NCBI GenBank assembly: GCA_047495785.1
Contig: JBLDXI010000019.1
Coordinates: forward strand, 3,286,001-3,350,000
Direction: 5' to 3'
Length of the DNA stretch: 64,000 nucleotides
Origin: Lepidodermella squamata
Taxonomy: Eukaryota; Animalia; Gastrotricha
Shown here: positions 13,571-49,538 of the stretch, in pieces
Numbering within the stretch: the first letter of the stretch is position 1
Layout of the letters: each line of letters opens with the position of its first letter
Position numbers and translations under genes: made by a program
The notes under the pieces: model-generated
The model's database searches: none
What the model saw: only the letters and a program-made list of their open reading frames with translations
What the model was told of the DNA's origin: nothing

Positions 13571-13649
13571 TAGTCAGTTGACTCGCTTCTGCCGACTTCG
13601 GAACTATGATCGCCCAGCACCATCCCAGCATTCAGCCATTCAACACCTA

Positions 13650-16985: not shown

Positions 16986-17010
16986 AAATATTCTATATAT
17001 TCCAGCACTG

Positions 17011-25479: not shown

Positions 25480-25630
25480 CGCTGGATCGTGCTGGAATCA
25501 ACGCTGGACGAGTGCTGGATGAGTGCCGGAGGAGTGCTGGAAAAAAATAAAGGCGAGAATTTTCAGGTGCTGGACAAGTGCCGGTGTAGTGCTGGATAAA
25601 AGTGCTGGATGAGTGCTGGAAAATATAGAA
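25480..25630 (+). repeat. Right subterminal GTGCTGG array (~11 copies) and right TIR
   Basis: Repeated (G/A)(T/C)GC(T/C)GG, mostly at ~11-bp spacing, ending in AGTGCTGGAAAATATAGAA. Confidence 0.9.
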
Positions 25631-26069
25631 ATCCCTAAACCTGGCCGGCTTTGAAGGTCTTAAAAGTGTACGCCGATTAAATATACCCCACCCCTTTCCT
25701 CAACGGTTTCAATACGGATTAATCTATTGTGTCTGTCGCTGAGCGTGGTCTAGTGAGCAAAAATCGAAACACTGGTATAAAGGCTGTCCTTCTCTTGGAG
25801 AGTTTGACCGGTGACAGCTCAATCAACGAATAAATTGCCGGCTGTAAAACCAAAAAAACCCAGCCAAAATTAAACCGGTGACTTTATTAGTGGTTATTAT
25901 TTGCTCAATCACAGACGCCTTAGAATTTCTAGGTAAAATCCCTTATTTGGCTACTCAAGTTGAAAGATTTTAGGTGTCAAGGATAAAGGATAGACATTGA
26001 CGATGGGAACATGATGTCAATAATCGCCATTTAGTCATTATTAAGTTCACACCTTCGGTCGCTCTCAAC

Positions 26070-26346
26070 TCACGGCCAGGCAGCCGAAGAAATGCAGCTG
26101 CAGCCATTGCTGAAACAAGCTTTAACTTTACCAGAGGGGCACGACTTGCCTCTGCCTGCCTCTTCCTGCGCTTGTTCAGCATTTCGGCTGCTTGGCTGCG
26201 CCACGGGTCCATCGCCACTGAACTCCGCTTCAGCGATTACGACAGATGAAACCTGCAAACCCGATATCATCATTCATAACCAAAATCCGGAGAAAAAGGG
26301 CTGCGTAACCTACCAGAAGAGCGATGATCGCAAATAATTTCAGCAT
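26070..26346 (-). CDS. Secreted cysteine-rich prepropeptide (toxin/defence-peptide-like), 71 aa, copy 1; exons 26346-26314 and 26252-26070
   Basis: A 61-bp GTAGGT...TTGCAG intron joins MLKLFAIIALL to VSSVVIAEAEFSGDGPVAQPSSRNAEQAQEEAGR-GKSCPSGKVKACFSNGCSCISSAAWP*. AATAAA on the minus strand at 25883-25888. Confidence 0.8.
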
Positions 26347-27561
26347 TGTACGAAGTCGTAAGGGAAAGAAACTCTCGAATTTCTCAAAAGAAAAAAAGCA
26401 ATAATGACGGCGGCTCATATGCTTCTTTCGATGAGCAGTTTTGCTCTCAGAGTATGCGTAGTATAACTAAGCGCCTTCAATAACAAAATATATAATATAA
26501 TAAAAGAAATGCCTCGAAATTTTGAAATAGTTTGTTCAGCTTCTGTTTTGTTATGTTGGAACCAGCTCGCTAGCGCGGACGACAAAACTGCCGATCGAAA
26601 GGAGCATATTACAGTGCTCCCTCGTTAAAGACACTCTTTTTAAAAGACCGTTTTCTTATTGAGGGCGTTTACGATAGGGAGAGGATCAGCGCCCCAGATG
26701 ATGCCTATGTTTTTGCATTCTCATAATAAATGAAATTCGCATAGCTAGTAAATACGCGATTGAAAAATCACAGGTCTTATTTCCCAAAGCGTAAAGCCTG
26801 AAGTCTTCGATTCTGTTCTAGTTCTTTTATATTACTTAAATCAGGGAAACGGGAAACTAACAACTTTGCATTATCTTTTTCGATGGTTCGGCGATTCGTC
26901 TCTAAAAATGCAAAAATCAGCATCTCGAAGCTGGGTTTTTCACTAAAAAGGATGGAATTTTAGGCCTTCTTCTAACTTCTTTCCGGAAAGATTCCAGATT
27001 GTTGAGAATTCGGTCTAATGAGCAAGTAAACTGTTGGCTTGAGAGAATAGAAAATATAAGAAAAAGAGTTATAAAATTATTTGTTATAAAAGCACGAAAC
27101 TTGCTAATTTTCGATCCAAGAAATCCCTAAACCTGGCCGGCTTTGAAGGTCTTAAAAGTGTACGCCGATTAAATATACCCCACCCCTTTCCTCAACGGTT
27201 TCAATACGGATTAATCTATTGTGTCTGTCGCTGAGCGTGGTCTAGTGAGCAAAAATCGAAACACTGGTATAAAGGCTGTCCTTCTCTTGGAGAGTTTGAC
27301 CGGTGACAGCTCAATCAACGAATAAATTGCCGGCTGTAAAACCAAAAAAACCCAGCCAAAATTAAACCGGTGACTTTATTAGTGGTTATTATTTGCTCAA
27401 TCACAGACGCCTTAGAATTTCTAGGTAAAATCCCTTATTTGGCTACTCAAGTTGAAAGATTTTAGGTGTCAAGGATAAAGGATAGACATTGACGATGGGA
27501 ACATGATGTCAATAATCGCCATTTAGTCATTATTAAGTTCACACCTTCGGTCGCTCTCAAC

Positions 27562-27838
27562 TCACGGCCAGGCAGCCGAAGAAATGCAGCTGCAGCCATT
27601 GCTGAAACAAGCTTTAACTTTACCAGAGGGGCACGACTTGCCTCTGCCTGCCTCTTCCTGCGCTTGTTCAGCATTTCGGCTGCTTGGCTGCGCCACGGGT
27701 CCATCGCCACTGAACTCCGCTTCAGCGATTACGACAGATGAAACCTGCAAACCTGATATCATCATTCATAACCAAAATCCGGAGAAAAAGGGCTGCGTAA
27801 CCTACCAGAAGAGCGATGATCGCAAATAATTTCAGCAT
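27562..27838 (-). CDS. Secreted Cys-rich prepropeptide, copy 2
   Basis: Same coding sequence as copy 1; intron SNP at 27754. Confidence 0.8.
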
Positions 27839-29053
27839 TGTACGAAGTCGTAAGGGAAAGAAACTCTCGAATTTCTCAAAAGAAAAAAAGCAATAATGAC
27901 GGCGGCTCATATGCTTCTTTCGATGAGCAGTTTTGCTCTCAGAGTATGCGTAGTATAACTAAGCGCCTTCAATAACAAAATATATAATATAATAAAAGAA
28001 ATGCCTCGAAATTTTGAAATAGTTTGTTCAGCTTCTGTTTTGTTATGTTGGAACCAGCTCGCTAGCGCGGACGACAAAACTGCCGATCGAAAGGAGCATA
28101 TTACAGTGCTCCCTCGTTAAAGACACTCTTTTTAAAAGACCGTTTTCTTATTGAGGGCGTTTACGATAGGGAGAGGATCAGCGCCCCAGATGATGCCTAT
28201 GTTTTTGCATTCTCATAATAAATGAAATTCGCATAGCTAGTAAATACGCGATTGAAAAATCACAGGTCTTATTTCCCAAAGCGTAAAGCCTGAAGTCTTC
28301 GATTCTGTTCTAGTTCTTTTATATTACTTAAATCAGGGAAACGGGAAACTAACAACTTTGCATTATCTTTTTCGATGGTTCGGCGATTCGTCTCTAAAAA
28401 TGCAAAAATCAGCATCTCGAAGCTGGGTTTTTCACTAAAAAGGATGGAATTTTAGGCCTTCTTCTAACTTCTTTCCGGAAAGATTCCAGATTGTTGAGAA
28501 TTCGGTCTAATGAGCAAGTAAACTGTTGGCTTGAGAGAATAGAAAATATAAGAAAAAGAGTTATAAAATTATTTGTTATAAAAGCACGAAACTTGCTAAT
28601 TTTCGATCCAAGAAATCCCTAAACCTGGCCGGCTTTGAAGGTCTTAAAAGTGTACGCCGATTAAATATACCCCACCCCTTTCCTCAACGGTTTCAATACG
28701 GATTAATCTATTGTGTCTGTCGCTGAGCGTGGTCTAGTGAGCAAAAATCGAAACACTGGTATAAAGGCTGTCCTTCTCTTGGAGAGTTTGACCGGTGACA
28801 GCTCAATCAACGAATAAATTGCCGGCTGTAAAACCAAAAAAACCCAGCCAAAATTAAACCGGTGACTTTATTAGTGGTTATTATTTGCTCAATCACAGAC
28901 GCCTTAGAATTTCTAGGTAAAATCCCTTATTTGGCTACTCAAGTTGAAAGATTTTAGGTGTCAAGGATAAAGGATAGACATTGACGATGGGAACATGATG
29001 TCAATAATCGCCATTTAGTCATTATTAAGTTCACACCTTCGGTCGCTCTCAAC

Positions 29054-29330
29054 TCACGGCCAGGCAGCCGAAGAAATGCAGCTGCAGCCATTGCTGAAAC
29101 AAGCTTTAACTTTACCAGAGGGGCACGACTTGCCTCTGCCTGCCTCTTCCTGCGCTTGTTCAGCATTTCGGCTGCTTGGCTGCGCCACGGGTCCATCGCC
29201 ACTGAACTCCGCTTCAGCGATTACGACAGATGAAACCTGCAAACCCGATATCATCATTCATAACCAAAATCCGGAGAAAAAGGGCTGCGTAACCTACCAG
29301 AAGAGCGATGATCGCAAATAATTTCAGCAT
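29054..29330 (-). CDS. Secreted Cys-rich prepropeptide, copy 3
   Basis: Same as copy 1 (+2984 bp). Confidence 0.8.
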
Positions 29331-30545
29331 TGTACGAAGTCGTAAGGGAAAGAAACTCTCGAATTTCTCAAAAGAAAAAAAGCAATAATGACGGCGGCTC
29401 ATATGCTTCTTTCGATGAGCAGTTTTGCTCTCAGAGTATGCGTAGTATAACTAAGCGCCTTCAATAACAAAATATATAATATAATAAAAGAAATGCCTCG
29501 AAATTTTGAAATAGTTTGTTCAGCTTCTGTTTTGTTATGTTGGAACCAGCTCGCTAGCGCGGACGACAAAACTGCCGATCGAAAGGAGCATATTACAGTG
29601 CTCCCTCGTTAAAGACACTCTTTTTAAAAGACCGTTTTCTTATTGAGGGCGTTTACGATAGGGAGAGGATCAGCGCCCCAGATGATGCCTATGTTTTTGC
29701 ATTCTCATAATAAATGAAATTCGCATAGCTAGTAAATACGCGATTGAAAAATCACAGGTCTTATTTCCCAAAGCGTAAAGCCTGAAGTCTTCGATTCTGT
29801 TCTAGTTCTTTTATATTACTGAAATCAGGGAAACGGGAAACTAACAACTTTGCATTATCTTTTTCGATGGTTCGGCGATTCGTCTCTAAAAATGCAAAAA
29901 TCAGCATCTCGAAGCTGGGTTTTTCACTAAAAAGGATGGAATTTTAGGCCTTCTTCTAACTTCTTTCCGGAAAGATTCCAGATTGTTGAGAATTCGGTCT
30001 AATGAGCAAGTAAACTGTTGGCTTGAGAGAATAGAAAATATAAGAAAAAGAGTTATAAAATTATTTGTTATAAAAGCACGAAACTTGCTAATTTTCGATC
30101 CAAGAAATCCCTAAACCTGGCCGGCTTTGAAGGTCTTAAAAGTGTACGCCGATTAAATATACCCCACCCCTTTCCTCAACGGTTTCAATACGGATTAATC
30201 TATTGTGTCTGTCGCTGAGCGTGGTCTAGTGAGCAAAAATCGAAACACTGGTATAAAGGCTGTCCTTCTCTTGGAGAGTTTGACCGGTGACAGCTCAATC
30301 AACGAATAAATTGCCGGCTGTAAAACCAAAAAAACCCAGCCAAAATTAAACCGGTGACTTTATTAGTGGTTATTATTTGCTCAATCACAGACGCCTTAGA
30401 ATTTCTAGGTAAAATCCCTTATTTGGCTACTCAAGTTGAAAGATTTTAGGTGTCAAGGATAAAGGATAGACATTGACGATGGGAACATGATGTCAATAAT
30501 CGCCATTTAGTCATTATTAAGTTCACACCTTCGGTCGCTCTCAAC

Positions 30546-30822
30546 TCACGGCCAGGCAGCCGAAGAAATGCAGCTGCAGCCATTGCTGAAACAAGCTTTA
30601 ACTTTACCAGAGGGGCACGACTTGCCTCTGCCTGCCTCTTCCTGCGCTTGTTCAGCATTTCGGCTGCTTGGCTGCGCCACGGGTCCATCGCCACTGAACT
30701 CCGCTTCAGCGATTACGACAGATGAAACCTGCAAACCCGATATCATCATTCATAACCAAAATCCGGAGAAAAAGGGCTGCGTAACCTACCAGAAGAGCGA
30801 TGATCGCAAATAATTTCAGCAT
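30546..30822 (-). CDS. Secreted Cys-rich prepropeptide, copy 4
   Basis: Same as copy 1. Confidence 0.8.
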
Positions 30823-32037
30823 TGTACGAAGTCGTAAGGGAAAGAAACTCTCGAATTTCTCAAAAGAAAAAAAGCAATAATGACGGCGGCTCATATGCTT
30901 CTTTCGATGAGCAGTTTTGCTCTCAGAGTATGCGTAGTATAACTAAGCGCCTTCAATAACAAAATATATAATATAATAAAAGAAATGCCTCGAAATTTTG
31001 AAATAGTTTGTTCAGCTTCTGTTTTGTTATGTTGGAACCAGCTCGCTAGCGCGGACGACAAAACTGCCGATCGAAAGGAGCATATTACAGTGCTCCCTCG
31101 TTAAAGACACTCTTTTTAAAAGACCGTTTTCTTATTGAGGGCGTTTACGATAGGGAGAGGATCAGCGCCCCAGATGATGCCTATGTTTTTGCATTCTCAT
31201 AATAAATGAAATTCGCATAGCTAGTAAATACGCGATTGAAAAATCACAGGTCTTATTTCCCAAAGCGTAAAGCCTGAAGTCTTCGATTCTGTTCTAGTTC
31301 TTTTATATTACTTAAATCAGGGAAACGGGAAACTAACAACTTTGCATTATCTTTTTCGATGGTTCGGCGATTCGTCTCTAAAAATGCAAAAATCAGCATC
31401 TCGAAGCTGGGTTTTTCACTAAAAAGGATGGAATTTTAGGCCTTCTTCTAACTTCTTTCCGGAAAGATTCCAGATTGTTGAGAATTCGGTCTAATGAGCA
31501 AGTAAACTGTTGGCTTGAGAGAATAGAAAATATAAGAAAAAGAGTTATAAAATTATTTGTTATAAAAGCACGAAACTTGCTAATTTTCGATCCAAGAAAT
31601 CCCTAAACCTGGCCGGCTTTGAAGGTCTTAAAAGTGTACGCCGATTAAATATACCCCACCCCTTTCCTCAACGGTTTCAATACGGATTAATCTATTGTGT
31701 CTGTCGCTGAGCGTGGTCTAGTGAGCAAAAATCGAAACACTGGTATAAAGGCTGTCCTTCTCTTGGAGAGTTTGACCGGTGACAGCTCAATCAACGAATA
31801 AATTGCCGGCTGTAAAACCAAAAAAACCCAGCCAAAATTAAACCGGTGACTTTATTAGTGGTTATTATTTGCTCAATCACAGACGCCTTAGAATTTCTAG
31901 GTAAAATCCCTTATTTGGCTACTCAAGTTGAAAGATTTTAGGTGTCAAGGATAAAGGATAGACATTGACGATGGGAACATGATGTCAATAATCGCCATTT
32001 AGTCATTATTAAGTTCACACCTTCGGTCGCTCTCAAC

Positions 32038-32314
32038 TCACGGCCAGGCAGCCGAAGAAATGCAGCTGCAGCCATTGCTGAAACAAGCTTTAACTTTACC
32101 AGAGGGGCACGACTTGCCTCTGCCTGCCTCTTCCTGCGCTTGTTCAGCATTTCGGCTGCTTGGCTGCGCCACGGGTCCATCGCCACTGAACTCCGCTTCA
32201 GCGATTACGACAGATGAAACCTGCAAACCCGATATCATCATTCATAACCAAAATCCGGAGAAAAAGGGCTGCGTAACCTACCAGAAGAGCGATGATCGCA
32301 AATAATTTCAGCAT
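32038..32314 (-). CDS. Secreted Cys-rich prepropeptide, copy 5
   Basis: Same as copy 1. Confidence 0.8.
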
Positions 32315-33529
32315 TGTACGAAGTCGTAAGGGAAAGAAACTCTCGAATTTCTCAAAAGAAAAAAAGCAATAATGACGGCGGCTCATATGCTTCTTTCGAT
32401 GAGCAGTTTTGCTCTCAGAGTATGCGTAGTATAACTAAGCGCCTTCAATAACAAAATATATAATATAATAAAAGAAATGCCTCGAAATTTTGAAATAGTT
32501 TGTTCAGCTTCTGTTTTGTTATGTTGGAACCAGCTCGCTAGCGCGGACGACAAAACTGCCGATCGAAAGGAGCATATTACAGTGCTCCCTCGTTAAAGAC
32601 ACTCTTTTTAAAAGACCGTTTTCTTATTGAGGGCGTTTACGATAGGGAGAGGATCAGCGCCCCAGATGATGCCTATGTTTTTGCATTCTCATAATAAATG
32701 AAATTCGCATAGCTAGTAAATACGCGATTGAAAAATCACAGGTCTTATTTCCCAAAGCGTAAAGCCTGAAGTCTTCGATTCTGTTCTAGTTCTTTTATAT
32801 TACTTAAATCAGGGAAACGGGAAACTAACAACTTTGCATTATCTTTTTCGATGGTTCGGCGATTCGTCTCTAAAAATGCAAAAATCAGCATCTCGAAGCT
32901 GGGTTTTTCACTAAAAAGGATGGAATTTTAGGCCTTCTTCTAACTTCTTTCCGGAAAGATTCCAGATTGTTGAGAATTCGGTCTAATGAGCAAGTAAACT
33001 GTTGGCTTGAGAGAATAGAAAATATAAGAAAAAGAGTTATAAAATTATTTGTTATAAAAGCACGAAACTTGCTAATTTTCGATCCAAGAAATCCCTAAAC
33101 CTGGCCGGCTTTGAAGGTCTTAAAAGTGTACGCCGATTAAATATACCCCACCCCTTTCCTCAACGGTTTCAATACGGATTAATCTATTGTGTCTGTCGCT
33201 GAGCGTGGTCTAGTGAGCAAAAATCGAAACACTGGTATAAAGGCTGTCCTTCTCTTGGAGAGTTTGACCGGTGACAGCTCAATCAACGAATAAATTGCCG
33301 GCTGTAAAACCAAAAAAACCCAGCCAAAATTAAACCGGTGACTTTATTAGTGGTTATTATTTGCTCAATCACAGACGCCTTAGAATTTCTAGGTAAAATC
33401 CCTTATTTGGCTACTCAAGTTGAAAGATTTTAGGTGTCAAGGATAAAGGATAGACATTGACGATGGGAACATGATGTCAATAATCGCCATTTAGTCATTA
33501 TTAAGTTCACACCTTCGGTCGCTCTCAAC

Positions 33530-33806
33530 TCACGGCCAGGCAGCCGAAGAAATGCAGCTGCAGCCATTGCTGAAACAAGCTTTAACTTTACCAGAGGGGC
33601 ACGACTTGCCTCTGCCTGCCTCTTCCTGCGCTTGTTCAGCATTTCGGCTGCTTGGCTGCGCCACGGGTCCATCGCCACTGAACTCCGCTTCAGCGATTAC
33701 GACAGATGAAACCTGCAAACCTGATATCATCATTCATAACCAAAATCCGGAGAAAAAGGGCTGCGTAACCTACCAGAAGAGCGATGATCGCAAATAATTT
33801 CAGCAT
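33530..33806 (-). CDS. Secreted Cys-rich prepropeptide, copy 6
   Basis: Same coding sequence; intron SNP at 33722 shared with copy 2. Confidence 0.8.
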
Positions 33807-35021
33807 TGTACGAAGTCGTAAGGGAAAGAAACTCTCGAATTTCTCAAAAGAAAAAAAGCAATAATGACGGCGGCTCATATGCTTCTTTCGATGAGCAGTT
33901 TTGCTCTCAGAGTATGCGTAGTATAACTAAGCGCCTTCAATAACAAAATATATAATATAATAAAAGAAATGCCTCGAAATTTTGAAATAGTTTGTTCAGC
34001 TTCTGTTTTGTTATGTTGGAACCAGCTCGCTAGCGCGGACGACAAAACTGCCGATCGAAAGGAGCATATTACAGTGCTCCCTCGTTAAAGACACTCTTTT
34101 TAAAAGACCGTTTTCTTATTGAGGGCGTTTACGATAGGGAGAGGATCAGCGCCCCAGATGATGCCTATGTTTTTGCATTCTCATAATAAATGAAATTCGC
34201 ATAGCTAGTAAATACGCGATTGAAAAATCACAGGTCTTATTTCCCAAAGCGTAAAGCCTGAAGTCTTCGATTCTGTTCTAGTTCTTTTATATTACTTAAA
34301 TCAGGGAAACGGGAAACTAACAACTTTGCATTATCTTTTTCGATGGTTCGGCGATTCGTCTCTAAAAATGCAAAAATCAGCATCTCGAAGCTGGGTTTTT
34401 CACTAAAAAGGATGGAATTTTAGGCCTTCTTCTAACTTCTTTCCGGAAAGATTCCAGATTGTTGAGAATTCGGTCTAATGAGCAAGTAAACTGTTGGCTT
34501 GAGAGAATAGAAAATATAAGAAAAAGAGTTATAAAATTATTTGTTATAAAAGCACGAAACTTGCTAATTTTCGATCCAAGAAATCCCTAAACCTGGCCGG
34601 CTTTGAAGGTCTTAAAAGTGTACGCCGATTAAATATACCCCACCCCTTTCCTCAACGGTTTCAATACGGATTAATCTATTGTGTCTGTCGCTGAGCGTGG
34701 TCTAGTGAGCAAAAATCGAAACACTGGTATAAAGGCTGTCCTTCTCTTGGAGAGTTTGACCGGTGACAGCTCAATCAACGAATAAATTGCCGGCTGTAAA
34801 ACCAAAAAAACCCAGCCAAAATTAAACCGGTGACTTTATTAGTGGTTATTATTTGCTCAATCACAGACGCCTTAGAATTTCTAGGTAAAATCCCTTATTT
34901 GGCTACTCAAGTTGAAAGATTTTAGGTGTCAAGGATAAAGGATAGACATTGACGATGGGAACATGATGTCAATAATCGCCATTTAGTCATTATTAAGTTC
35001 ACACCTTCGGTCGCTCTCAAC

Positions 35022-35298
35022 TCACGGCCAGGCAGCCGAAGAAATGCAGCTGCAGCCATTGCTGAAACAAGCTTTAACTTTACCAGAGGGGCACGACTTG
35101 CCTCTGCCTGCCTCTTCCTGCGCTTGTTCAGCATTTCGGCTGCTTGGCTGCGCCACGGGTCCATCGCCACTGAACTCCGCTTCAGCGATTACGACAGATG
35201 AAACCTGCAAACCCGATATCATCATTCATAACCAAAATCCGGAGAAAAAGGGCTGCGTAACCTACCAGAAGAGCGATGATCGCAAATAATTTCAGCAT
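35022..35298 (-). CDS. Secreted Cys-rich prepropeptide, copy 7
   Basis: Same as copy 1. Confidence 0.8.
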
Positions 35299-36513: not shown

Positions 36514-36790
36514 TCACGGCCAGGCAGCCGAAGAAATGCAGCTGCAGCCATTGCTGAAACAAGCTTTAACTTTACCAGAGGGGCACGACTTGCCTCTGCC
36601 TGCCTCTTCCTGCGCTTGTTCAGCATTTCGGCTGCTTGGCTGCGCCACGGGTCCATCGCCACTGAACTCCGCTTCAGCGATTACGACAGATGAAACCTGC
36701 AAACCCGATATCATCATTCATAACCAAAATCCGGAGAAAAAGGGCTGCGTAACCTACCAGAAGAGCGATGATCGCAAATAATTTCAGCAT
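36514..36790 (-). CDS. Secreted Cys-rich prepropeptide, copy 8
   Basis: Same as copy 1. Confidence 0.8.
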
Positions 36791-38005: not shown

Positions 38006-38282
38006 TCACGGCCAGGCAGCCGAAGAAATGCAGCTGCAGCCATTGCTGAAACAAGCTTTAACTTTACCAGAGGGGCACGACTTGCCTCTGCCTGCCTCTT
38101 CCTGCGCTTGTTCAGCATTTCGGCTGCTTGGCTGCGCCACGGGTCCATCGCCACTGAACTCCGCTTCAGCGATTACGACAGATGAAACCTGCAAACCCGA
38201 TATCATCATTCATAACCAAAATCCGGAGAAAAAGGGCTGCGTAACCTACCAGAAGAGCGATGATCGCAAATAATTTCAGCAT
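38006..38282 (-). CDS. Secreted Cys-rich prepropeptide, copy 9
   Basis: Same as copy 1. Confidence 0.8.
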
Positions 38283-39497: not shown

Positions 39498-39774
39498 TCA
39501 CGGCCAGGCAGCCGAAGAAATGCAGCTGCAGCCATTGCTGAAACAAGCTTTAACTTTACCAGAGGGGCACGACTTGCCTCTGCCTGCCTCTTCCTGCGCT
39601 TGTTCAGCATTTCGGCTGCTTGGCTGCGCCACGGGTCCATCGCCACTGAACTCCGCTTCAGCGATTACGACAGATGAAACCTGCAAACCCGATATCATCA
39701 TTCATAACCAAAATCCGGAGAAAAAGGGCTGCGTAACCTACCAGAAGAGCGATGATCGCAAATAATTTCAGCAT
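39498..39774 (-). CDS. Secreted Cys-rich prepropeptide, copy 10
   Basis: Same as copy 1. Confidence 0.8.
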
Positions 39775-40989
39775 TGTACGAAGTCGTAAGGGAAAGAAAC
39801 TCTCGAATTTCTCAAAAGAAAAAAAGCAATAATGACGGCGGCTCATATGCTTCTTTCGATGAGCAGTTTTGCTCTCAGAGTATGCGTAGTATAACTAAGC
39901 GCCTTCAATAACAAAATATATAATATAATAAAAGAAATGCCTCGAAATTTTGAAATAGTTTGTTCAGCTTCTGTTTTGTTATGTTGGAACCAGCTCGCTA
40001 GCGCGGACGACAAAACTGCCGATCGAAAGGAGCATATTACAGTGCTCCCTCGTTAAAGACACTCTTTTTAAAAGACCGTTTTCTTATTGAGGGCGTTTAC
40101 GATAGGGAGAGGATCAGCGCCCCAGATGATGCCTATGTTTTTGCATTCTCATAATAAATGAAATTCGCATAGCTAGTAAATACGCGATTGAAAAATCACA
40201 GGTCTTATTTCCCAAAGCGTAAAGCCTGAAGTCTTCGATTCTGTTCTAGTTCTTTTATATTACTTAAATCAGGGAAACGGGAAACTAACAACTTTGCATT
40301 ATCTTTTTCGATGGTTCGGCGATTCGTCTCTAAAAATGCAAAAATCAGCATCTCGAAGCTGGGTTTTTCACTAAAAAGGATGGAATTTTAGGCCTTCTTC
40401 TAACTTCTTTCCGGAAAGATTCCAGATTGTTGAGAATTCGGTCTAATGAGCAAGTAAACTGTTGGCTTGAGAGAATAGAAAATATAAGAAAAAGAGTTAT
40501 AAAATTATTTGTTATAAAAGCACGAAACTTGCTAATTTTCGATCCAAGAAATCCCTAAACCTGGCCGGCTTTGAAGGTCTTAAAAGTGTACGCCGATTAA
40601 ATATACCCCACCCCTTTCCTCAACGGTTTCAATACGGATTAATCTATTGTGTCTGTCGCTGAGCGTGGTCTAGTGAGCAAAAATCGAAACACTGGTATAA
40701 AGGCTGTCCTTCTCTTGGAGAGTTTGACCGGTGACAGCTCAATCAACGAATAAATTGCCGGCTGTAAAACCAAAAAAACCCAGCCAAAATTAAACCGGTG
40801 ACTTTATTAGTGGTTATTATTTGCTCAATCACAGACGCCTTAGAATTTCTAGGTAAAATCCCTTATTTGGCTACTCAAGTTGAAAGATTTTAGGTGTCAA
40901 GGATAAAGGATAGACATTGACGATGGGAACATGATGTCAATAATCGCCATTTAGTCATTATTAAGTTCACACCTTCGGTCGCTCTCAAC

Positions 40990-41266
40990 TCACGGCCAGG
41001 CAGCCGAAGAAATGCAGCTGCAGCCATTGCTGAAACAAGCTTTAACTTTACCAGAGGGGCACGACTTGCCTCTGCCTGCCTCTTCCTGCGCTTGTTCAGC
41101 ATTTCGGCTGCTTGGCTGCGCCACGGGTCCATCGCCACTGAACTCCGCTTCAGCGATTACGACAGATGAAACCTGCAAACCCGATATCATCATTCATAAC
41201 CAAAATCCGGAGAAAAAGGGCTGCGTAACCTACCAGAAGAGCGATGATCGCAAATAATTTCAGCAT
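40990..41266 (-). CDS. Secreted Cys-rich prepropeptide, copy 11
   Basis: Same as copy 1. Confidence 0.8.
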
Positions 41267-42481
41267 TGTACGAAGTCGTAAGGGAAAGAAACTCTCGAAT
41301 TTCTCAAAAGAAAAAAAGCAATAATGACGGCGGCTCATATGCTTCTTTCGATGAGCAGTTTTGCTCTCAGAGTATGCGTAGTATAACTAAGCGCCTTCAA
41401 TAACAAAATATATAATATAATAAAAGAAATGCCTCGAAATTTTGAAATAGTTTGTTCAGCTTCTGTTTTGTTATGTTGGAACCAGCTCGCTAGCGCGGAC
41501 GACAAAACTGCCGATCGAAAGGAGCATATTACAGTGCTCCCTCGTTAAAGACACTCTTTTTAAAAGACCGTTTTCTTATTGAGGGCGTTTACGATAGGGA
41601 GAGGATCAGCGCCCCAGATGATGCCTATGTTTTTGCATTCTCATAATAAATGAAATTCGCATAGCTAGTAAATACGCGATTGAAAAATCACAGGTCTTAT
41701 TTCCCAAAGCGTAAAGCCTGAAGTCTTCGATTCTGTTCTAGTTCTTTTATATTACTTAAATCAGGGAAACGGGAAACTAACAACTTTGCATTATCTTTTT
41801 CGATGGTTCGGCGATTCGTCTCTAAAAATGCAAAAATCAGCATCTCGAAGCTGGGTTTTTCACTAAAAAGGATGGAATTTTAGGCCTTCTTCTAACTTCT
41901 TTCCGGAAAGATTCCAGATTGTTGAGAATTCGGTCTAATGAGCAAGTAAACTGTTGGCTTGAGAGAATAGAAAATATAAGAAAAAGAGTTATAAAATTAT
42001 TTGTTATAAAAGCACGAAACTTGCTAATTTTCGATCCAAGAAATCCCTAAACCTGGCCGGCTTTGAAGGTCTTAAAAGTGTACGCCGATTAAATATACCC
42101 CACCCCTTTCCTCAACGGTTTCAATACGGATTAATCTATTGTGTCTGTCGCTGAGCGTGGTCTAGTGAGCAAAAATCGAAACACTGGTATAAAGGCTGTC
42201 CTTCTCTTGGAGAGTTTGACCGGTGACAGCTCAATCAACGAATAAATTGCCGGCTGTAAAACCAAAAAAACCCAGCCAAAATTAAACCGGTGACTTTATT
42301 AGTGGTTATTATTTGCTCAATCACAGACGCCTTAGAATTTCTAGGTAAAATCCCTTATTTGGCTACTCAAGTTGAAAGATTTTAGGTGTCAAGGATAAAG
42401 GATAGACATTGACGATGGGAACATGATGTCAATAATCGCCATTTAGTCATTATTAAGTTCACACCTTCGGTCGCTCTCAAC

Positions 42482-42758
42482 TCACGGCCAGGCAGCCGAA
42501 GAAATGCAGCTGCAGCCATTGCTGAAACAAGCTTTAACTTTACCAGAGGGGCACGACTTGCCTCTGCCTGCCTCTTCCTGCGCTTGTTCAGCATTTCGGC
42601 TGCTTGGCTGCGCCACGGGTCCATCGCCACTGAACTCCGCTTCAGCGATTACGACAGATGAAACCTGCAAACCCGATATCATCATTCATAACCAAAATCC
42701 GGAGAAAAAGGGCTGCGTAACCTACCAGAAGAGCGATGATCGCAAATAATTTCAGCAT
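42482..42758 (-). CDS. Secreted Cys-rich prepropeptide, copy 12
   Basis: Same as copy 1. Confidence 0.8.
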
Positions 42759-43973
42759 TGTACGAAGTCGTAAGGGAAAGAAACTCTCGAATTTCTCAAA
42801 AGAAAAAAAGCAATAATGACGGCGGCTCATATGCTTCTTTCGATGAGCAGTTTTGCTCTCAGAGTATGCGTAGTATAACTAAGCGCCTTCAATAACAAAA
42901 TATATAATATAATAAAAGAAATGCCTCGAAATTTTGAAATAGTTTGTTCAGCTTCTGTTTTGTTATGTTGGAACCAGCTCGCTAGCGCGGACGACAAAAC
43001 TGCCGATCGAAAGGAGCATATTACAGTGCTCCCTCGTTAAAGACACTCTTTTTAAAAGACCGTTTTCTTATTGAGGGCGTTTACGATAGGGAGAGGATCA
43101 GCGCCCCAGATGATGCCTATGTTTTTGCATTCTCATAATAAATGAAATTCGCATAGCTAGTAAATACGCGATTGAAAAATCACAGGTCTTATTTCCCAAA
43201 GCGTAAAGCCTGAAGTCTTCGATTCTGTTCTAGTTCTTTTATATTACTTAAATCAGGGAAACGGGAAACTAACAACTTTGCATTATCTTTTTCGATGGTT
43301 CGGCGATTCGTCTCTAAAAATGCAAAAATCAGCATCTCGAAGCTGGGTTTTTCACTAAAAAGGATGGAATTTTAGGCCTTCTTCTAACTTCTTTCCGGAA
43401 AGATTCCAGATTGTTGAGAATTCGGTCTAATGAGCAAGTAAACTGTTGGCTTGAGAGAATAGAAAATATAAGAAAAAGAGTTATAAAATTATTTGTTATA
43501 AAAGCACGAAACTTGCTAATTTTCGATCCAAGAAATCCCTAAACCTGGCCGGCTTTGAAGGTCTTAAAAGTGTACGCCGATTAAATATACCCCACCCCTT
43601 TCCTCAACGGTTTCAATACGGATTAATCTATTGTGTCTGTCGCTGAGCGTGGTCTAGTGAGCAAAAATCGAAACACTGGTATAAAGACTGTCCTTCTCTT
43701 GGAGAGTTTGACCGGTGACAGCTCAATCAACGAATAAATTGCCGGCTGTAAAACCAAAAAAACCCAGCCAAAATTAAACCGGTGACTTTATTAGTGGTTA
43801 TTATTTGCTCAATCACAGACGCCTTAGAATTTCTAGGTAAAATCCCTTATTTGGCTACTCAAGTTGAAAGATTTTAGGTGTCAAGGATAAAGGATAGACA
43901 TTGACGATGGGAACATGATGTCAATAATCGCCATTTAGTCATTATTAAGTTCACACCTTCGGTCGCTCTCAAC

Positions 43974-44250
43974 TCACGGCCAGGCAGCCGAAGAAATGCA
44001 GCTGCAGCCATTGCTGAAACAAGCTTTAACTTTACCAGAGGGGCACGACTTGCCTCTGCCTGCCTCTTCCTGCGCTTGTTCAGCATTTCGGCTGCTTGGC
44101 TGCGCCACGGGTCCATCGCCACTGAACTCCGCTTCAGCGATTACGACAGATGAAACCTGCAAACCCGATATCATCATTCATAACCAAAATCCGGAGAAAA
44201 AGGGCTGCGTAACCTACCAGAAGAGCGATGATCGCAAATAATTTCAGCAT
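43974..44250 (-). CDS. Secreted Cys-rich prepropeptide, copy 13
   Basis: Same coding sequence; flanking SNPs at 43687 and 44741. Confidence 0.8.
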
Positions 44251-45465
44251 TGTACGAAGTCGTAAGGGAAAGAAACTCTCGAATTTCTCAAAAGAAAAAA
44301 AGCAATAATGACGGCGGCTCATATGCTTCTTTCGATGAGCAGTTTTGCTCTCAGAGTATGCGTAGTATAACTAAGCGCCTTCAATAACAAAATATATAAT
44401 ATAATAAAAGAAATGCCTCGAAATTTTGAAATAGTTTGTTCAGCTTCTGTTTTGTTATGTTGGAACCAGCTCGCTAGCGCGGACGACAAAACTGCCGATC
44501 GAAAGGAGCATATTACAGTGCTCCCTCGTTAAAGACACTCTTTTTAAAAGACCGTTTTCTTATTGAGGGCGTTTACGATAGGGAGAGGATCAGCGCCCCA
44601 GATGATGCCTATGTTTTTGCATTCTCATAATAAATGAAATTCGCATAGCTAGTAAATACGCGATTGAAAAATCACAGGTCTTATTTCCCAAAGCGTAAAG
44701 CCTGAAGTCTTCGATTCTGTTCTAGTTCTTTTATATTACTGAAATCAGGGAAACGGGAAACTAACAACTTTGCATTATCTTTTTCGATGGTTCGGCGATT
44801 CGTCTCTAAAAATGCAAAAATCAGCATCTCGAAGCTGGGTTTTTCACTAAAAAGGATGGAATTTTAGGCCTTCTTCTAACTTCTTTCCGGAAAGATTCCA
44901 GATTGTTGAGAATTCGGTCTAATGAGCAAGTAAACTGTTGGCTTGAGAGAATAGAAAATATAAGAAAAAGAGTTATAAAATTATTTGTTATAAAAGCACG
45001 AAACTTGCTAATTTTCGATCCAAGAAATCCCTAAACCTGGCCGGCTTTGAAGGTCTTAAAAGTGTACGCCGATTAAATATACCCCACCCCTTTCCTCAAC
45101 GGTTTCAATACGGATTAATCTATTGTGTCTGTCGCTGAGCGTGGTCTAGTGAGCAAAAATCGAAACACTGGTATAAAGGCTGTCCTTCTCTTGGAGAGTT
45201 TGACCGGTGACAGCTCAATCAACGAATAAATTGCCGGCTGTAAAACCAAAAAAACCCAGCCAAAATTAAACCGGTGACTTTATTAGTGGTTATTATTTGC
45301 TCAATCACAGACGCCTTAGAATTTCTAGGTAAAATCCCTTATTTGGCTACTCAAGTTGAAAGATTTTAGGTGTCAAGGATAAAGGATAGACATTGACGAT
45401 GGGAACATGATGTCAATAATCGCCATTTAGTCATTATTAAGTTCACACCTTCGGTCGCTCTCAAC

Positions 45466-45742
45466 TCACGGCCAGGCAGCCGAAGAAATGCAGCTGCAGC
45501 CATTGCTGAAACAAGCTTTAACTTTACCAGAGGGGCACGACTTGCCTCTGCCTGCCTCTTCCTGCGCTTGTTCAGCATTTCGGCTGCTTGGCTGCGCCAC
45601 GGGTCCATCGCCACTGAACTCCGCTTCAGCGATTACGACAGATGAAACCTGCAAACCCGATATCATCATTCATAACCAAAATCCGGAGAAAAAGGGCTGC
45701 GTAACCTACCAGAAGAGCGATGATCGCAAATAATTTCAGCAT
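45466..45742 (-). CDS. Secreted Cys-rich prepropeptide, copy 14
   Basis: Same as copy 1. Confidence 0.8.
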
Positions 45743-46957
45743 TGTACGAAGTCGTAAGGGAAAGAAACTCTCGAATTTCTCAAAAGAAAAAAAGCAATAA
45801 TGACGGCGGCTCATATGCTTCTTTCGATGAGCAGTTTTGCTCTCAGAGTATGCGTAGTATAACTAAGCGCCTTCAATAACAAAATATATAATATAATAAA
45901 AGAAATGCCTCGAAATTTTGAAATAGTTTGTTCAGCTTCTGTTTTGTTATGTTGGAACCAGCTCGCTAGCGCGGACGACAAAACTGCCGATCGAAAGGAG
46001 CATATTACAGTGCTCCCTCGTTAAAGACACTCTTTTTAAAAGACCGTTTTCTTATTGAGGGCGTTTACGATAGGGAGAGGATCAGCGCCCCAGATGATGC
46101 CTATGTTTTTGCATTCTCATAATAAATGAAATTCGCATAGCTAGTAAATACGCGATTGAAAAATCACAGGTCTTATTTCCCAAAGCGTAAAGCCTGAAGT
46201 CTTCGATTCTGTTCTAGTTCTTTTATATTACTTAAATCAGGGAAACGGGAAACTAACAACTTTGCATTATCTTTTTCGATGGTTCGGCGATTCGTCTCTA
46301 AAAATGCAAAAATCAGCATCTCGAAGCTGGGTTTTTCACTAAAAAGGATGGAATTTTAGGCCTTCTTCTAACTTCTTTCCGGAAAGATTCCAGATTGTTG
46401 AGAATTCGGTCTAATGAGCAAGTAAACTGTTGGCTTGAGAGAATAGAAAATATAAGAAAAAGAGTTATAAAATTATTTGTTATAAAAGCACGAAACTTGC
46501 TAATTTTCGATCCAAGAAATCCCTAAACCTGGCCGGCTTTGAAGGTCTTAAAAGTGTACGCCGATTAAATATACCCCACCCCTTTCCTCAACGGTTTCAA
46601 TACGGATTAATCTATTGTGTCTGTCGCTGAGCGTGGTCTAGTGAGCAAAAATCGAAACACTGGTATAAAGGCTGTCCTTCTCTTGGAGAGTTTGACCGGT
46701 GACAGCTCAATCAACGAATAAATTGCCGGCTGTAAAACCAAAAAAACCCAGCCAAAATTAAACCGGTGACTTTATTAGTGGTTATTATTTGCTCAATCAC
46801 AGACGCCTTAGAATTTCTAGGTAAAATCCCTTATTTGGCTACTCAAGTTGAAAGATTTTAGGTGTCAAGGATAAAGGATAGACATTGACGATGGGAACAT
46901 GATGTCAATAATCGCCATTTAGTCATTATTAAGTTCACACCTTCGGTCGCTCTCAAC

Positions 46958-47234
46958 TCACGGCCAGGCAGCCGAAGAAATGCAGCTGCAGCCATTGCTG
47001 AAACAAGCTTTAACTTTACCAGAGGGGCACGACTTGCCTCTGCCTGCCTCTTCCTGCGCTTGTTCAGCATTTCGGCTGCTTGGCTGCGCCACGGGTCCAT
47101 CGCCACTGAACTCCGCTTCAGCGATTACGACAGATGAAACCTGCAAACCCGATATCATCATTCATAACCAAAATCCGGAGAAAAAGGGCTGCGTAACCTA
47201 CCAGAAGAGCGATGATCGCAAATAATTTCAGCAT
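46958..47234 (-). CDS. Secreted Cys-rich prepropeptide, copy 15
   Basis: Same as copy 1. Confidence 0.8.
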
Positions 47235-48322
47235 TGTACGAAGTCGTAAGGGAAAGAAACTCTCGAATTTCTCAAAAGAAAAAAAGCAATAATGACGGCG
47301 GCTCATATGCTTCTTTCGATGAGCAGTTTTGCTCTCAGAGTATGCGTAGTATAACTAAGCGCCTTCAATAACAAAATATATAATATAATAAAAGAAATGC
47401 CTCGAAATTTTGAAATAGTTTGTTCAGCTTCTGTTTTGTTATGTTGGAACCAGCTCGCTAGCGCGGACGACAAAACTGCCGATCGAAAGGAGCATATTAC
47501 AGTGCTCCCTCGTTAAAGACACTCTTTTTAAAAGACCGTTTTCTTATTGAGGGCGTTTACGATAGGGAGAGGATCAGCGCCCCAGATGATGCCTATGTTT
47601 TTGCATTCTCATAATAAATGAAATTCGCATAGCTAGTAAATACGCGATTGAAAAATCACAGGTCTTATTTCCCAAAGCGTAAAGCCTGAAGTCTTCGATT
47701 CTGTTCTAGTTCTTTTATATTACTTAAATCAGGGAAACGGGAAACTAACAACTTTGCATTATCTTTTTCGATGGTTCGGCGATTCGTCTCTAAAAATGCA
47801 AAAATCAGCATCTCGAAGCTGGGTTTTTCACTAAAAAGGATGGAATTTTAGGCCTTCTTCTAACTTCTTTCCGGAAAGATTCCAGATTGTTGAGAATTCG
47901 GTCTAATGAGCAAGTAAACTGTTGGCTTGAGAGAATAGAAAATATAAGAAAAAGAGTTATAAAATTATTTGTTATAAAAGCACGAAACTTGCTAATTTTC
48001 GATCCAAGAAATCCCTAAACCTGGCCGGCTTTGAAGGTCTTAAAAGTGTACGCCGATTAAATATACCCCACCCCTTTCCTCAACGGTTTCAATACGGATT
48101 AATCTATTGTGTCTGTCGCTGAGCGTGGTCTAGTGAGCAAAAATCGAAACACTGGTATAAAGGCTGTCCTTCTCTTGGAGAGTTTGACCGGTGACAGCTC
48201 AATCAACGAATAAATTGCCGGCTGTAAAACCAAAAAAACCCAGCCAAAATTAAACCGGTGACTTTATTAGTGGTTATTATTTGCTCAATCACAGACGCCT
48301 TAGAATTTCTAGGTAAAATCCC

Positions 48323-49538
48323 TGCTTAGGTCATTGTACCATCCGAGGAAGTAAGGCCTTGGCTGTTGGTCACCGTGTTCGGGTAACTGGGCCATAACCC
48401 AGGATGAACCAATTGAACTGCCTGTGATAATGTTCAATTTATAACTGCTACGAGCCCTAGATAGCATGGGGGCAATATATATTCATGCTCTAATGTCATT
48501 CATATGTGCCTATAGCGCCGGCCGGCGGAGGGCCTATATAAATAAAACTACGACATGCTAACCAATTGATTCGGTCAAGTTAATCATTCAAAGCCAGAAG
48601 CGTCTACAGTATGCAAAACACAATGATTGATTCGAATTGAAATGTTAAATAACATTCCATACCACTGTATTCCACGATAAGAACGCCTTTAGTACTAGCG
48701 AAAATCCTAGCATTCCTAGTTGGTCAGGCTGCCGAGTATCCACATTTTCATAACTTATAGTTTCAAAGAGGATAATTTGACCTCTATTACCACAGATGAT
48801 TTTATAGCGAAATTCGAAGGAATATTTATTATTGAATCGGAGGGACTTGAACATGCTAAGAATGTCTGTGGCGATCGCATTGTCTTATTGGCCTAGTGCC
48901 TGCTAATTTATTTTAGTGCTGCTTGGTTTTAACGAACACTCGAGACTTGCAAAACACATACTTGCGGTGGCGTAAGCGTGTTTTAATTAGTAGGATCGAA
49001 GCATAACTTTAGGCCGCGCACACGAAGCTCGAATTTTAGAACCGGTTCCAGCGCCGGAACCACTTGGTCAGTTGACTCGCTTCTGCCGACTTCGGAACTA
49101 TGATCGCCCAGCACCATCCCAGCATTCAGCCATTCAACACCTACAAAATCCTTAAAAATGCAAATATGTTTTTATTATGAGAAAAGCCTTACAAAACAAT
49201 TTAGGTAAAGCCATAATTTTTCAATCATGTAAGACTAGTCATGGGAAAATTGAAGTCGTGTGATCATTTGAGCGTTCTAATTGTTTTTCTCCGATCAAAT
49301 CGCATGTAATTTTTTTCAAACGATCACACGATGATCTACAAAAGGTATTTTCGATGTTGTCTTTCTAATACAAGTATCAAACCGATCGGTTGCGATTTCC
49401 TAAACGGTAAAAGCATTGAGAACCAAGCTCCCAAAATTATCAAGATTCATCGGCTTCCTGAAGCGTGCTGTTGCAGGCTCGGAATGACGACTGACAGGGA
49501 GGCCAAAACTGAAACAACCAAACAGGAGTAACCGAGCG
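48323..49538 (+). repeat. Segmental duplication copy B, including a 5' fragment of the 11638-12958 GPCR
   Basis: Matches 12847-13649 plus 16585-16985. Lacks the 2.9-kb TIR element and carries its own 143-bp insertion. Confidence 0.9.
48417..48559 (+). mobile_element. 143-bp insertion with 10-bp target duplication
   Basis: AACCAATTGA at 48407-48416 and 48560-48569. Single copy of this 10-mer at the empty site (~12931-12940). Confidence 0.85.

What the first reader, a model, noticed from the sequence alone, without database searches (positions are those of the whole stretch)
25627..48323. Hidden 15-copy tandem array of a toxin-like secreted four-cysteine peptide gene
Seen: the 1492-bp repeat looks like satellite in the ORF track, but splicing a 61-bp GT-AG intron (the size typical of this window) gives MLKLFAIIALLVSSVVIAEA | EFSGDGPVAQPSSRNAEQAQEEAGR | GKSCPSGKVKACFSNGCSCISSAAWP*, with AATAAA ~180 nt after the stop. 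All 15 coding copies appear identical. Established: signal peptide + acidic propeptide ending in Glu-rich...Arg + short Cys-rich mature peptide is the classic precursor layout of animal venom and antimicrobial peptides, and near-identical tandem amplification for dosage is known for the Nematostella Nv1 toxin locus. Inference: the mature product is a 26-aa cationic (+3) peptide with C-X7-C-X4-C-X1-C, probably a two-disulfide beta-hairpin (CFSNGC turn). I do not recognise the family, so it may be a new toxin, antimicrobial or pheromone system.
Basis: partly seen in the sequence, partly recalled or inferred. Interest (0 to 1): 0.9.

Follow-up and report, generated by a model that had tools for sequence, protein, structure and literature searches.

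The report
Fifteen-copy array of orphan secreted-peptide gene
A 1.5-kb stretch repeated 15 times almost without a single difference carries, in every copy, a small two-exon gene that probably encodes a secreted four-cysteine peptide with no detectable relatives; it is a plausible but unproven new peptide family, and calling it a toxin is only a guess.

Summary
Window 25627-48323 is 15 full units of 1492 bp plus a 317-bp partial unit. The units differ by 5 substitutions at 3 sites, none in the proposed coding sequence.

On the minus strand each unit has:
- an 11-codon ATG exon;
- a 61-nt GT-AG intron;
- a 60-codon exon ending in a four-cysteine tail (C-x7-C-x4-C-x1-C);
- an AATAAA 181 nt after the stop.

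Support for a real gene:
- The signal-peptide-like start is rare by chance: 0.011 expected per random unit, and none in the other 41 kb.
- The intron fits the 52-59 nt intron shared by neighbouring GPCR paralogs.
- The coding part is a G+C island.
- AlphaFold2 gives a moderately confident beta-hairpin over the cysteine tail.

Against, or neutral:
- Codon usage gives no support.
- 24 other frame-keeping GT-AG pairs exist.
- An in-frame upstream ATG exists.
- The single-Arg propeptide cleavage site is conjecture.
- No homolog was found in any protein, structure or contig search, and there are no expression data.

The array lies in a rearranging GPCR gene cluster, and its right edge cuts a receptor gene copy. 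Best reading: a lineage-restricted secreted cysteine-rich peptide gene amplified for dosage, function unknown. The organism was not identified.

The parts
25627..48323 (-). Tandem array: 15 full 1492-bp units plus a 317-bp partial unit at the high-coordinate end. That end is the 5' end in gene orientation.
   Evidence: constant 1492-bp spacing and 5 substitutions in all; variant columns, two of them shared by non-adjacent units.
25627..27118 (-). First unit, used as reference. Features of unit k lie at these coordinates plus 1492 x (k-1).
26314..26346 (-). Proposed exon 1 (CDS part): ATG plus 10 codons. It reads Met-Leu-Lys and then eight hydrophobic residues. The ATG has A at -3.
   Evidence: translation; the only start of this kind in the unit, none in 41.3 kb of non-array window, 0.011 expected per random unit.
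26253..26313 (-). Proposed 61-nt phase-0 intron, GTAGGT...TTTGCAG. Two units carry a substitution in it.
   Evidence: sequence; the intron shared by GPCR paralogs in this window is 52-59 nt with GT-AG; this pair has the best-looking donor and acceptor of 24 arithmetic options. There is no transcript evidence.
26070..26252 (-). Proposed exon 2 (CDS part), 60 codons plus stop. It encodes the end of the signal peptide (ending Ala-Glu-Ala), an acidic Ala/Gln/Glu-rich spacer, and a four-cysteine C-terminal tail.
   Evidence: translation. G+C is 53-57% here against 33-45% in the rest of the unit; helix in the spacer, hairpin in the tail.
26073..26150 (-).
   Evidence: strands at exon-2 residues 42-47 and 50-55, block pLDDT 85 and 75; no true match among solved structures.
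25883..25888 (-). AATAAA polyadenylation-type hexamer, 181 nt after the stop.
   Evidence: It is weak on its own; by my estimate about 0.3 such hexamers are expected by chance in the 440 nt downstream.
26417..26609 (.). Inverted repeat with 27-nt arms (89% complementary) and 139 nt between them. It lies just upstream of the CDS, contains the in-frame upstream ATG (26418), and flanks a TATA-like hexamer (26494).
   Evidence: DNA fold z = -2.1; only a far-sub-threshold Rfam hairpin hit..
48007..48323 (-). Partial unit (unit offsets 0-316). It holds only the 3' flank of a gene copy, including the AATAAA.
48324..48437 (-). 5' fragment (about the first 40 codons) of a rhodopsin-like GPCR paralog, cut off exactly at the array edge.
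   Evidence: 97% identical to the start of ORF 12476-12958; the junction shows at most 1-2 nt of microhomology.
48324..49446 (.). Right flank. It is a recent segmental duplicate (95-100% identical) of 12848-13651 plus 16574-16893.
25503..25620 (.). Degenerate 11-bp minisatellite abutting the left edge of the array.

Best explanation
Each 1492-bp unit is a complete small gene. It has a promoter region, an 11-codon first exon, a 61-nt intron, a 60-codon second exon and a polyadenylation signal. It encodes a 71-residue secretory precursor made of:
- a signal peptide of about 20 residues, cleaved after Ala-Glu-Ala;
- an acidic spacer;
- a C-terminal four-cysteine module that folds as a disulfide-braced beta-hairpin.

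The gene was amplified very recently, or is kept homogeneous by unequal crossing-over or gene conversion. The 15 identical head-to-tail copies most simply raise the amount of one secreted product.

Shown: the array, the identity of the copies, the reading frames, the splice-site motifs and their fit to local introns, and the rarity of the signal-like start.

Inferred: splicing, secretion, the disulfides, dosage as the reason for amplification, and the role. My committed guess for the role is an abundantly secreted defence-type peptide (antimicrobial, antifouling or toxin-like) rather than a hormone. I put this at about 0.35.
For: Array and copy identity.
Frames and translations.
Signal-like start: one in the unit, 0 in 41.3 kb of non-array window on both strands, 0.011 expected per simulated unit. 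It continues hydrophobic in exon 2 and ends with small residues at -3 and -1 (von Heijne rule, established knowledge).
Intron: GT-AG, 61 nt, against 52-59 nt for the position-conserved intron of six GPCR paralogs in the same window.
G+C island over the CDS.
AATAAA 181 nt after the stop, and A at -3 of the main ATG.
AlphaFold2 single-sequence model: hairpin over the cysteine tail, with the middle two cysteines opposite each other; block pLDDT 85 and 75.
Precedent for near-identical tandem arrays of secreted peptide genes: Nematostella Nv1, 14 of 18 copies 99% alike and 0-17 copies per haplotype (PMC9842752).
Precedent for the layout of signal, leader and C-terminal two-disulfide hairpin core: barrettides (PMC8713285).
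Against: No homolog was found anywhere:
- Pfam and PDB sequences.
- The 5.8-billion-protein word search.
- Exhaustive HMMER against 1.84 billion representatives, which gave only two repeat-inflated false hits lacking the cysteines.
- Metagenome, prokaryote-genome and viral contigs.
- Fold searches.

Other points against:
- The codon-usage log-odds of exon 2 rank 81st of 167 chance ORFs. The training genes were membrane receptors, so the test is weak.
- Twenty-four frame-keeping GT-AG pairs are arithmetically possible.
- An in-frame ATG 72 nt upstream, in a weak context, would add 24 residues if the transcript starts above it.
- ORFs of 60 codons are expected by chance in a unit of this size (and my own estimate).
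- All substitutions lie outside the CDS, but only about 0.7 of 5 would be expected inside it, so this says nothing about constraint.
- There are no transcript, peptide or read-depth data.
Confidence: 0.6

Rival explanations
1. It is a non-coding macrosatellite. A 1.5-kb unit was amplified by unequal crossing-over in an unstable region, and the ORF, the 'signal peptide' and the splice motifs are fortuitous or the relic of a dead gene.
For: - There are no homologs in any search.
- Codon usage is indistinguishable from chance ORFs.
- Chance ORFs of this length are expected.
- Many alternative GT-AG pairings exist.
- The region is visibly rearranging: there are segmental duplicates, truncated receptor genes, another 191-bp tandem array, and retroelement and Helitron-like fragments.
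Against: - The strict signal-like ATG start is expected only 0.011 times per unit, yet it sits 94 nt upstream of, and on the same strand as, the cysteine-bearing ORF.
- A G+C island coincides with the CDS.
- The donor, the acceptor and the intron length all fit local introns.
- AlphaFold2 gives a confident hairpin to the cysteine tail without any alignment.
Confidence: 0.27
2. It is a real secreted peptide that acts as a signal (hormone, pheromone or settlement cue). It may act on receptors of the surrounding GPCR cluster rather than as a defence molecule.
For: The array is embedded among at least eight rhodopsin-like GPCR paralogs and two GABA-B-like class C receptors. The layout of signal, spacer and C-terminal peptide is also that of prohormones (established knowledge).
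Against: - The co-location looks accidental: the array edge truncates a receptor copy at a non-homologous junction.
- There is no dibasic site and no C-terminal Gly for amidation.
- Fifteen identical copies argue for bulk product, which is unusual for a hormone (inference).
Confidence: 0.1
3. The copy number is an assembly artefact: a few real copies were inflated or mis-joined by the assembler.
For: Near-perfect identity of 1.5-kb units is hard to assemble. The right edge of the array coincides with the breakpoint of a 95-100% identical segmental duplicate.
Against: - Three variant sites distinguish units, and two variants recur in non-adjacent units (units 2 and 6; units 3 and 13). This is expected of resolved real copies.
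- The period is exactly constant.
- The array-flank junction shares only 1-2 nt with either parent, so it is not a join through a repeat.
Confidence: 0.05

Closest known systems
Nematostella vectensis Nv1 toxin locus (NaTx family)
   Same: Head-to-tail array of a small intron-containing gene for a secreted cysteine-rich peptide. The copies are nearly identical (14 of 18 copies 99% alike; 0-17 copies per haplotype; PMC9842752). Amplification is read as a dosage device.
   Different: There is no sequence or Pfam relation. This peptide has four cysteines, not six. There is no dibasic propeptide end. No evidence of toxicity or of gland or stinging-cell expression exists. The organism is unknown.
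Barrettides of the sponge Geodia barretti (two-disulfide beta-hairpin peptides)
   Same: The precursor has a signal peptide of about 19-20 residues, then a leader, then a C-terminal core of about 30 residues. The core has two disulfides in a beta-hairpin. The genes carry short introns and the family is species-restricted (PMC8713285).
   Different: The cysteine spacing is C-x1-C-x10-C-x4-C there and C-x7-C-x4-C-x1-C here. There is no sequence match to the solved barrettide chains in the PDB search. Barrettides are acidic, whereas this tail is basic. No tandem array is reported for them.
Cationic two-disulfide beta-hairpin antimicrobial peptides (tachyplesin, protegrin, gomesin, arenicin type). 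This comparison rests on my own knowledge; no such protein came back as a named hit.
   Same: Short, basic, disulfide-braced hairpin made from a precursor with a signal peptide and an acidic pro-region.
   Different: Those peptides carry a much higher positive charge and symmetric cysteine ladders. Here only the middle cysteine pair faces across the predicted hairpin and the net charge is at most +3. No hit to any of them was found.
ORF-bearing macrosatellites of vertebrates (D4Z4/DUX4, RS447/USP17). This comparison rests on my own knowledge.
   Same: Kilobase-sized tandem units of very high identity, each with one open reading frame, and variable copy number.
   Different: Those units are 3-5 kb, encode known protein families and are intronless retrogene-like. 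Here the unit is 1.5 kb with a two-exon orphan peptide gene.

Membership tests
Eukaryotic secretory precursor (cleavable signal peptide) | N-terminal n-region with a basic residue, an uninterrupted hydrophobic h-region, and a c-region with small residues at -3 and -1. | tested here: met
   Exon 1 has Lys at position 3 followed by 8 hydrophobic residues. Exon 2 starts hydrophobic and reaches Ala-Glu-Ala at its residues 7-9. The rule-based count shows such starts are rare. The exons were judged separately and not joined, and no SignalP-type tool was on hand.
Spliceosomal two-exon gene | GT-AG intron of a size and motif typical of the genome, restoring the frame. | tested here: met
   The intron is 61 nt against 52-59 nt in six paralogous GPCR genes, and the frame is restored. 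However, 23 other arithmetic pairings exist.
Spliceosomal two-exon gene | Spliced, polyadenylated transcript. | not testable with these tools
   No transcript data. Only an AATAAA 181 nt after the stop.
Nv1 / NaTx sea-anemone toxin array | Tandem, near-identical gene copies. | tested here: met
Nv1 / NaTx sea-anemone toxin array | Sequence membership in the sea-anemone sodium-channel toxin family (six-cysteine fold). | tested here: not met
   No Pfam family at E up to 10, no PDB sequence match, and only four cysteines.
Nv1 / NaTx sea-anemone toxin array | Propeptide ending in a dibasic processing site. | tested here: not met
   A single Arg preceded by Gly, Ala, Glu, Glu, with no basic residue at -2, -4, -6 or -8.
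Barrettides | Cysteine framework C-x1-C-x10-C-x4-C with I-IV, II-III pairing (PMC8713285). | tested here: not met
   The framework here is C-x7-C-x4-C-x1-C.
Barrettides | Sequence similarity to barrettide chains. | tested here: not met
   The PDB holds barrettide C (7SAG according to PMC8713285). Neither exon 2 nor the tail alone matched it at E up to 10.
Barrettides | Beta-hairpin braced by two disulfides. | tested here: inconclusive
   The AlphaFold2 single-sequence model shows a hairpin with moderate confidence. Disulfide pairing was not obtainable.
Cationic beta-hairpin antimicrobial peptides | High net positive charge and a symmetric cross-strand cysteine ladder. | tested here: not met
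   The tail has three Lys and no acidic residue, so +3 at most, and the cysteine spacing is asymmetric. No named hit was found.
Known non-coding RNA gene arrays (5S, snRNA, spliced-leader type) | Match to an Rfam family within the unit. | tested here: not met
   No match at gathering score in the window. There was only one far-sub-threshold hairpin hit at E 0.08 in the unit, and no tRNA.

The most novel reading that the evidence does not exclude
The array encodes the founding member of a lineage-restricted, possibly de novo born, family of secreted two-disulfide hairpin peptides with a cysteine framework not matched in any searched collection. In that case it was amplified to 15 identical copies within a very short evolutionary time (about 0.04% mean pairwise difference between units). 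It would be a new scaffold for a defence or signalling peptide, and a clean natural example of dosage amplification caught in the act.
Probability: 0.2. Interest if true: 0.7.

Novelty: new member of a known kind. Interest (0 to 1): 0.45.

Why it matters
If transcripts and the peptide are found, three things follow:
- It would add a new cysteine framework and family to the short list of animal-encoded disulfide hairpin peptides.
- It would give a second, independent case beside Nematostella Nv1 of a secreted-peptide gene held as an array of identical copies. That is useful for studying how such arrays arise and are homogenised.
- It would show that short two-exon peptide genes are missed when such repeats are written off as satellite.

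If not, it is an ordinary macrosatellite in a rearranging receptor-gene cluster.

Tried and rejected
Searches and tests that gave nothing or were set aside:
- TRF missed the array because its period limit is 500.
- Rfam and tRNA scans gave nothing.
- Exact look-ups of the neighbours and of the unspliced ORF were not in the collection.
- Word-index searches with exon 2, the class C receptor and a GPCR exon were all blank, so the organism could not be named.
- Exhaustive HMMER with exon 2 gave two hits. Both are long internally repetitive proteins whose score is summed over repeats, and they have no aligned cysteines. I rejected them.
- The metagenome scan gave one locus (L001). It was selected by an exact 8-residue pattern in the spacer and has no cysteine tail. 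I rejected it.
- Prokaryote-genome and viral contig scans gave none. The phage DNA search gave none.
- PDB matches of the 26-residue tail to designed propeller proteins are repeat-inflated, with each stretch at 3.8 bits or less. I rejected them.
- Foldseek against PDB and BFVD gave nothing below E = 0.5.
- The codon-usage test was uninformative.
- The bacterial promoter and terminator scan is irrelevant for a eukaryote.
- tblastn found no diverged paralog of the peptide elsewhere in the window.
- Other ORFs of the unit have no Pfam family.
Full report
OBSERVATION

The array exists exactly as described. The repeat finder places 16 in-register copies at a constant 1492-bp spacing starting at 25627. 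A base-by-base comparison shows 15 full units (25627-48006) and a 317-bp partial unit (48007-48323). Only 5 substitutions occur across the 15 units. They fall at three unit offsets: first-unit coordinate 26262 (units 2 and 6), 26837 (units 3 and 13) and 25783 (unit 13). None lies in the proposed coding sequence. Only about 0.7 of 5 would be expected there by chance, so this says nothing about selection. Mean pairwise difference between units is about 0.04%. The amplification is therefore very recent, or the units are being actively homogenised. TRF missed the array because of its 500-bp period limit.

THE GENE MODEL

On the minus strand the first unit reads as follows:
- ATG at 26346, with A at -3.
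- Eleven codons to 26314: Met-Leu-Lys and then eight hydrophobic residues.
- A 61-nt stretch from GTAGGT to TTTGCAG (26313-26253).
- Sixty codons and a stop (26252-26070).

Exon 2 begins hydrophobic and reaches Ala-Glu-Ala at residues 7-9, which fits the -3/-1 rule. An acidic Ala/Gln/Glu-rich spacer follows, then a tail with four cysteines spaced C-x7-C-x4-C-x1-C. AATAAA lies 181 nt after the stop.

If the intron is not removed, the first ATG gives only a 38-codon hydrophobic ORF. The cysteine ORF could then start only at an internal ATG, without a signal peptide.

IS IT MORE THAN CHANCE?

An ORF of 60 codons is not rare. One unit has four ORFs of 60 aa or more, all piled over 25970-26418.

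Three things are unusual:
1. The signal-like start. I defined it as M, then up to 3 residues containing K or R and no acidic residue, then at least 8 hydrophobic residues. It occurs once in the unit and not once in the 41.3 kb of non-array window on either strand. Only 0.011 are expected per simulated unit.
2. G+C. The coding part is a G+C island of 53-57%, against 33-45% in the rest of the unit.
3. The intron size. Neighbouring two-exon GPCR paralogs share a position-conserved GT-AG intron of 52-59 nt.

Against over-reading:
- Twenty-four frame-keeping GT-AG pairs are arithmetically possible from this ATG. The 61-nt one is simply the best-looking.
- A codon-usage log-odds trained on the window's receptor genes ranks exon 2 only 81st of 167 chance ORFs. 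The test is weak because the training set is membrane proteins.
- An in-frame ATG 72 nt upstream (26418, weak context) would add 24 residues if it is transcribed. A TATA-like hexamer lies at 26494.

STRUCTURE

AlphaFold2 without an alignment gave mean pLDDT 66 for exon 2. For the last two blocks of ten residues it gave 85 and 75. The model has a helix in the spacer and two strands, at exon-2 residues 42-47 and 50-55, around a Ser-Asn turn. This puts the second and third cysteines opposite each other. The first cysteine lies outside the hairpin and the fourth lies in the second strand, so their pairing is open. Foldseek found nothing significant in the PDB or BFVD.

RELATIVES

None were found:
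- Pfam at E up to 10 and PDB sequences. The only PDB 'hits' are repeat-inflated designed propellers with no aligned cysteines.
- The word-index search of 5.8 billion proteins.
- The exhaustive HMMER search of 1.84 billion representatives. Its two hits are long repetitive proteins without the cysteines.
- Metagenome contigs. The one locus was selected by an 8-residue pattern in the spacer and is spurious.
- Prokaryote genomes, viral contigs and the rest of the window.

Limits of these searches:
- Short intron-containing peptide genes are rarely annotated.
- None of the collections is a eukaryote genome DNA database.
- A 60-residue query can reach only fairly close relatives.

'Orphan' therefore means orphan in what could be searched. 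No search or fold was run on the joined exons, and exon 1 (11 residues) is too short for the search tools. I also left out a literature search with typed peptide letters.

SURROUNDINGS

The window is from a eukaryote with animal-type receptors. The organism could not be named, because exact and homology look-ups of neighbouring proteins were blank.

The array sits in a cluster of two-exon rhodopsin-like GPCR paralogs (weak 7tm_1 hits; mutual similarity 41-86%):
- Minus strand: about 70-804, 3786-5014, 5485-6746, 7628-8871, 9713-10949, 11641-12958 and 60995-62248.
- Plus strand: 54373-55809.

Two intronless class C receptors lie at 49447-51729 and 57765-60035. They are 87% identical and each has a signal peptide, an ANF_receptor domain and seven hydrophobic segments. 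Their nearest solved relatives are GABA-B subunits.

The right flank of the array (48324-49446) is a 95-100% identical segmental duplicate of 12848-13651 plus 16574-16893. It starts with the first 40 or so codons of a GPCR copy that is cut off exactly at the array edge. The junction shares at most 1-2 nt with either parent. That is the mark of a non-homologous rearrangement rather than a join through a repeat. A remnant of a third class C gene (last 31 codons) lies at 16897-16989. The left flank is unique sequence ending in a degenerate 11-bp minisatellite.

The gene-orientation 5' end of the array is thus a truncated unit fused to a truncated receptor gene. The array lies in a region of recent duplication and breakage. 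Its closeness to receptor genes looks incidental.

HOW IT MOST LIKELY WORKS

I read each unit as a self-contained gene for a 71-residue secretory precursor. The array would be a dosage device for one abundant secreted, disulfide-braced hairpin peptide.

The array, frames, motifs and rarity statistics are shown. Splicing, secretion, disulfides and dosage are inferred.

The product may therefore be the whole 51-residue chain (about neutral) rather than a 26-residue +3 peptide.

For function I commit, with low confidence (about 0.35), to a defence-type secreted peptide. A signalling role is the main alternative among coding readings. A non-coding macrosatellite with a fortuitous or dead ORF remains a serious rival (about 0.27).

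COMPARISON WITH WHAT IS KNOWN

In organisation it works like the Nematostella Nv1 locus: near-identical tandem copies of a small secreted-peptide gene (PMC9842752). It is not a member of that toxin family, because it has four cysteines instead of six, no sequence relation and no dibasic site.

In precursor layout and predicted fold it resembles the sponge barrettides: a 19-residue signal, a leader and a C-terminal two-disulfide hairpin core (PMC8713285). Its cysteine framework differs, it matched none of the PDB chain sequences (which include barrettide C, 7SAG), and its charge is opposite.

Compared with classical cationic hairpin antimicrobial peptides (my own knowledge), it is far less basic and its cysteine spacing is asymmetric.

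VERDICT

- The gene model is plausible and better than chance, but unverified.
- The 'toxin-like' label is unsupported.
- Novelty: a new, apparently orphan member of a known kind, namely tandemly amplified secreted cysteine-rich peptide genes.
- Interest is moderate. It would rise sharply with a spliced transcript or a detected peptide.

No sequence in the window was taken for human.

Noticed in passing
window 70-12958 (-), 54373-55809 (+), 60995-62248 (-): There is a cluster of at least eight two-exon rhodopsin-like GPCR paralogs, 41-86% identical to each other. They share one position-conserved GT-AG intron of 52-59 nt. They gave no hit in the word-index protein search or among the PDB chain sequences, which suggests a lineage-specific expansion.
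   Followed up: partly
window 49447-51729 (-) and 57765-60035 (-); remnant 16897-16989 (-): There are two intronless class C GPCR genes, 87% identical. Each has a signal peptide, an ANF_receptor domain and 7 hydrophobic segments, and their nearest solved relatives are GABA-B subunits. The last 31 codons of a third copy also survive.
   Followed up: partly
window 48324-49446 versus 12848-13651 and 16574-16893: This is a recent segmental duplication, 95-100% identical. One breakpoint coincides with the array edge. The copy at 48417-48559 carries an extra 143 nt or so that the other lacks.
   Followed up: partly
window 14329-15750: There is a second, unrelated tandem array: a 191-bp unit, 7.4 copies, 94% matches. 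It lies inside the interval that is missing from the duplicated copy next to the peptide array.
   Followed up: no
window 26417-26443 and 26583-26609 (every unit): A 27-nt inverted repeat (89% complementary) encloses 139 nt just upstream of the CDS. It is MITE-like or a promoter hairpin. The DNA fold z-score is -2.1, and there is only a far-sub-threshold Rfam microRNA-precursor hit.
   Followed up: partly
window 21370-22529 (-): Two separate ORF pieces match reverse transcriptase (RVT_1). This is a fragmentary retroelement about 3 kb from the left edge of the array. It was not analysed further and its breaks were not counted.
   Followed up: no
window 3359-3835 (+): An ORF with a PIF1-like helicase fragment lies antisense within a GPCR gene. 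It is probably a Helitron-type remnant.
   Followed up: no
window 63229-63984 (-): An ORF with an NHL repeat lies at the window end. It is part of a gene that runs off the window.
   Followed up: no
window 25845-25901 versus 7183-7238; 48508-48561 versus 53403-53457: There are two short dispersed matches. One is 58 nt at 79% identity between the unit's polyadenylation-signal region and the 3' side of a GPCR gene. The other is a 55-nt inverted match at 87% identity near the array's right flank. They may be small mobile or 3'-end elements.
   Followed up: no
window 25503-25620: A degenerate 11-bp minisatellite directly abuts the left edge of the array.
   Followed up: no
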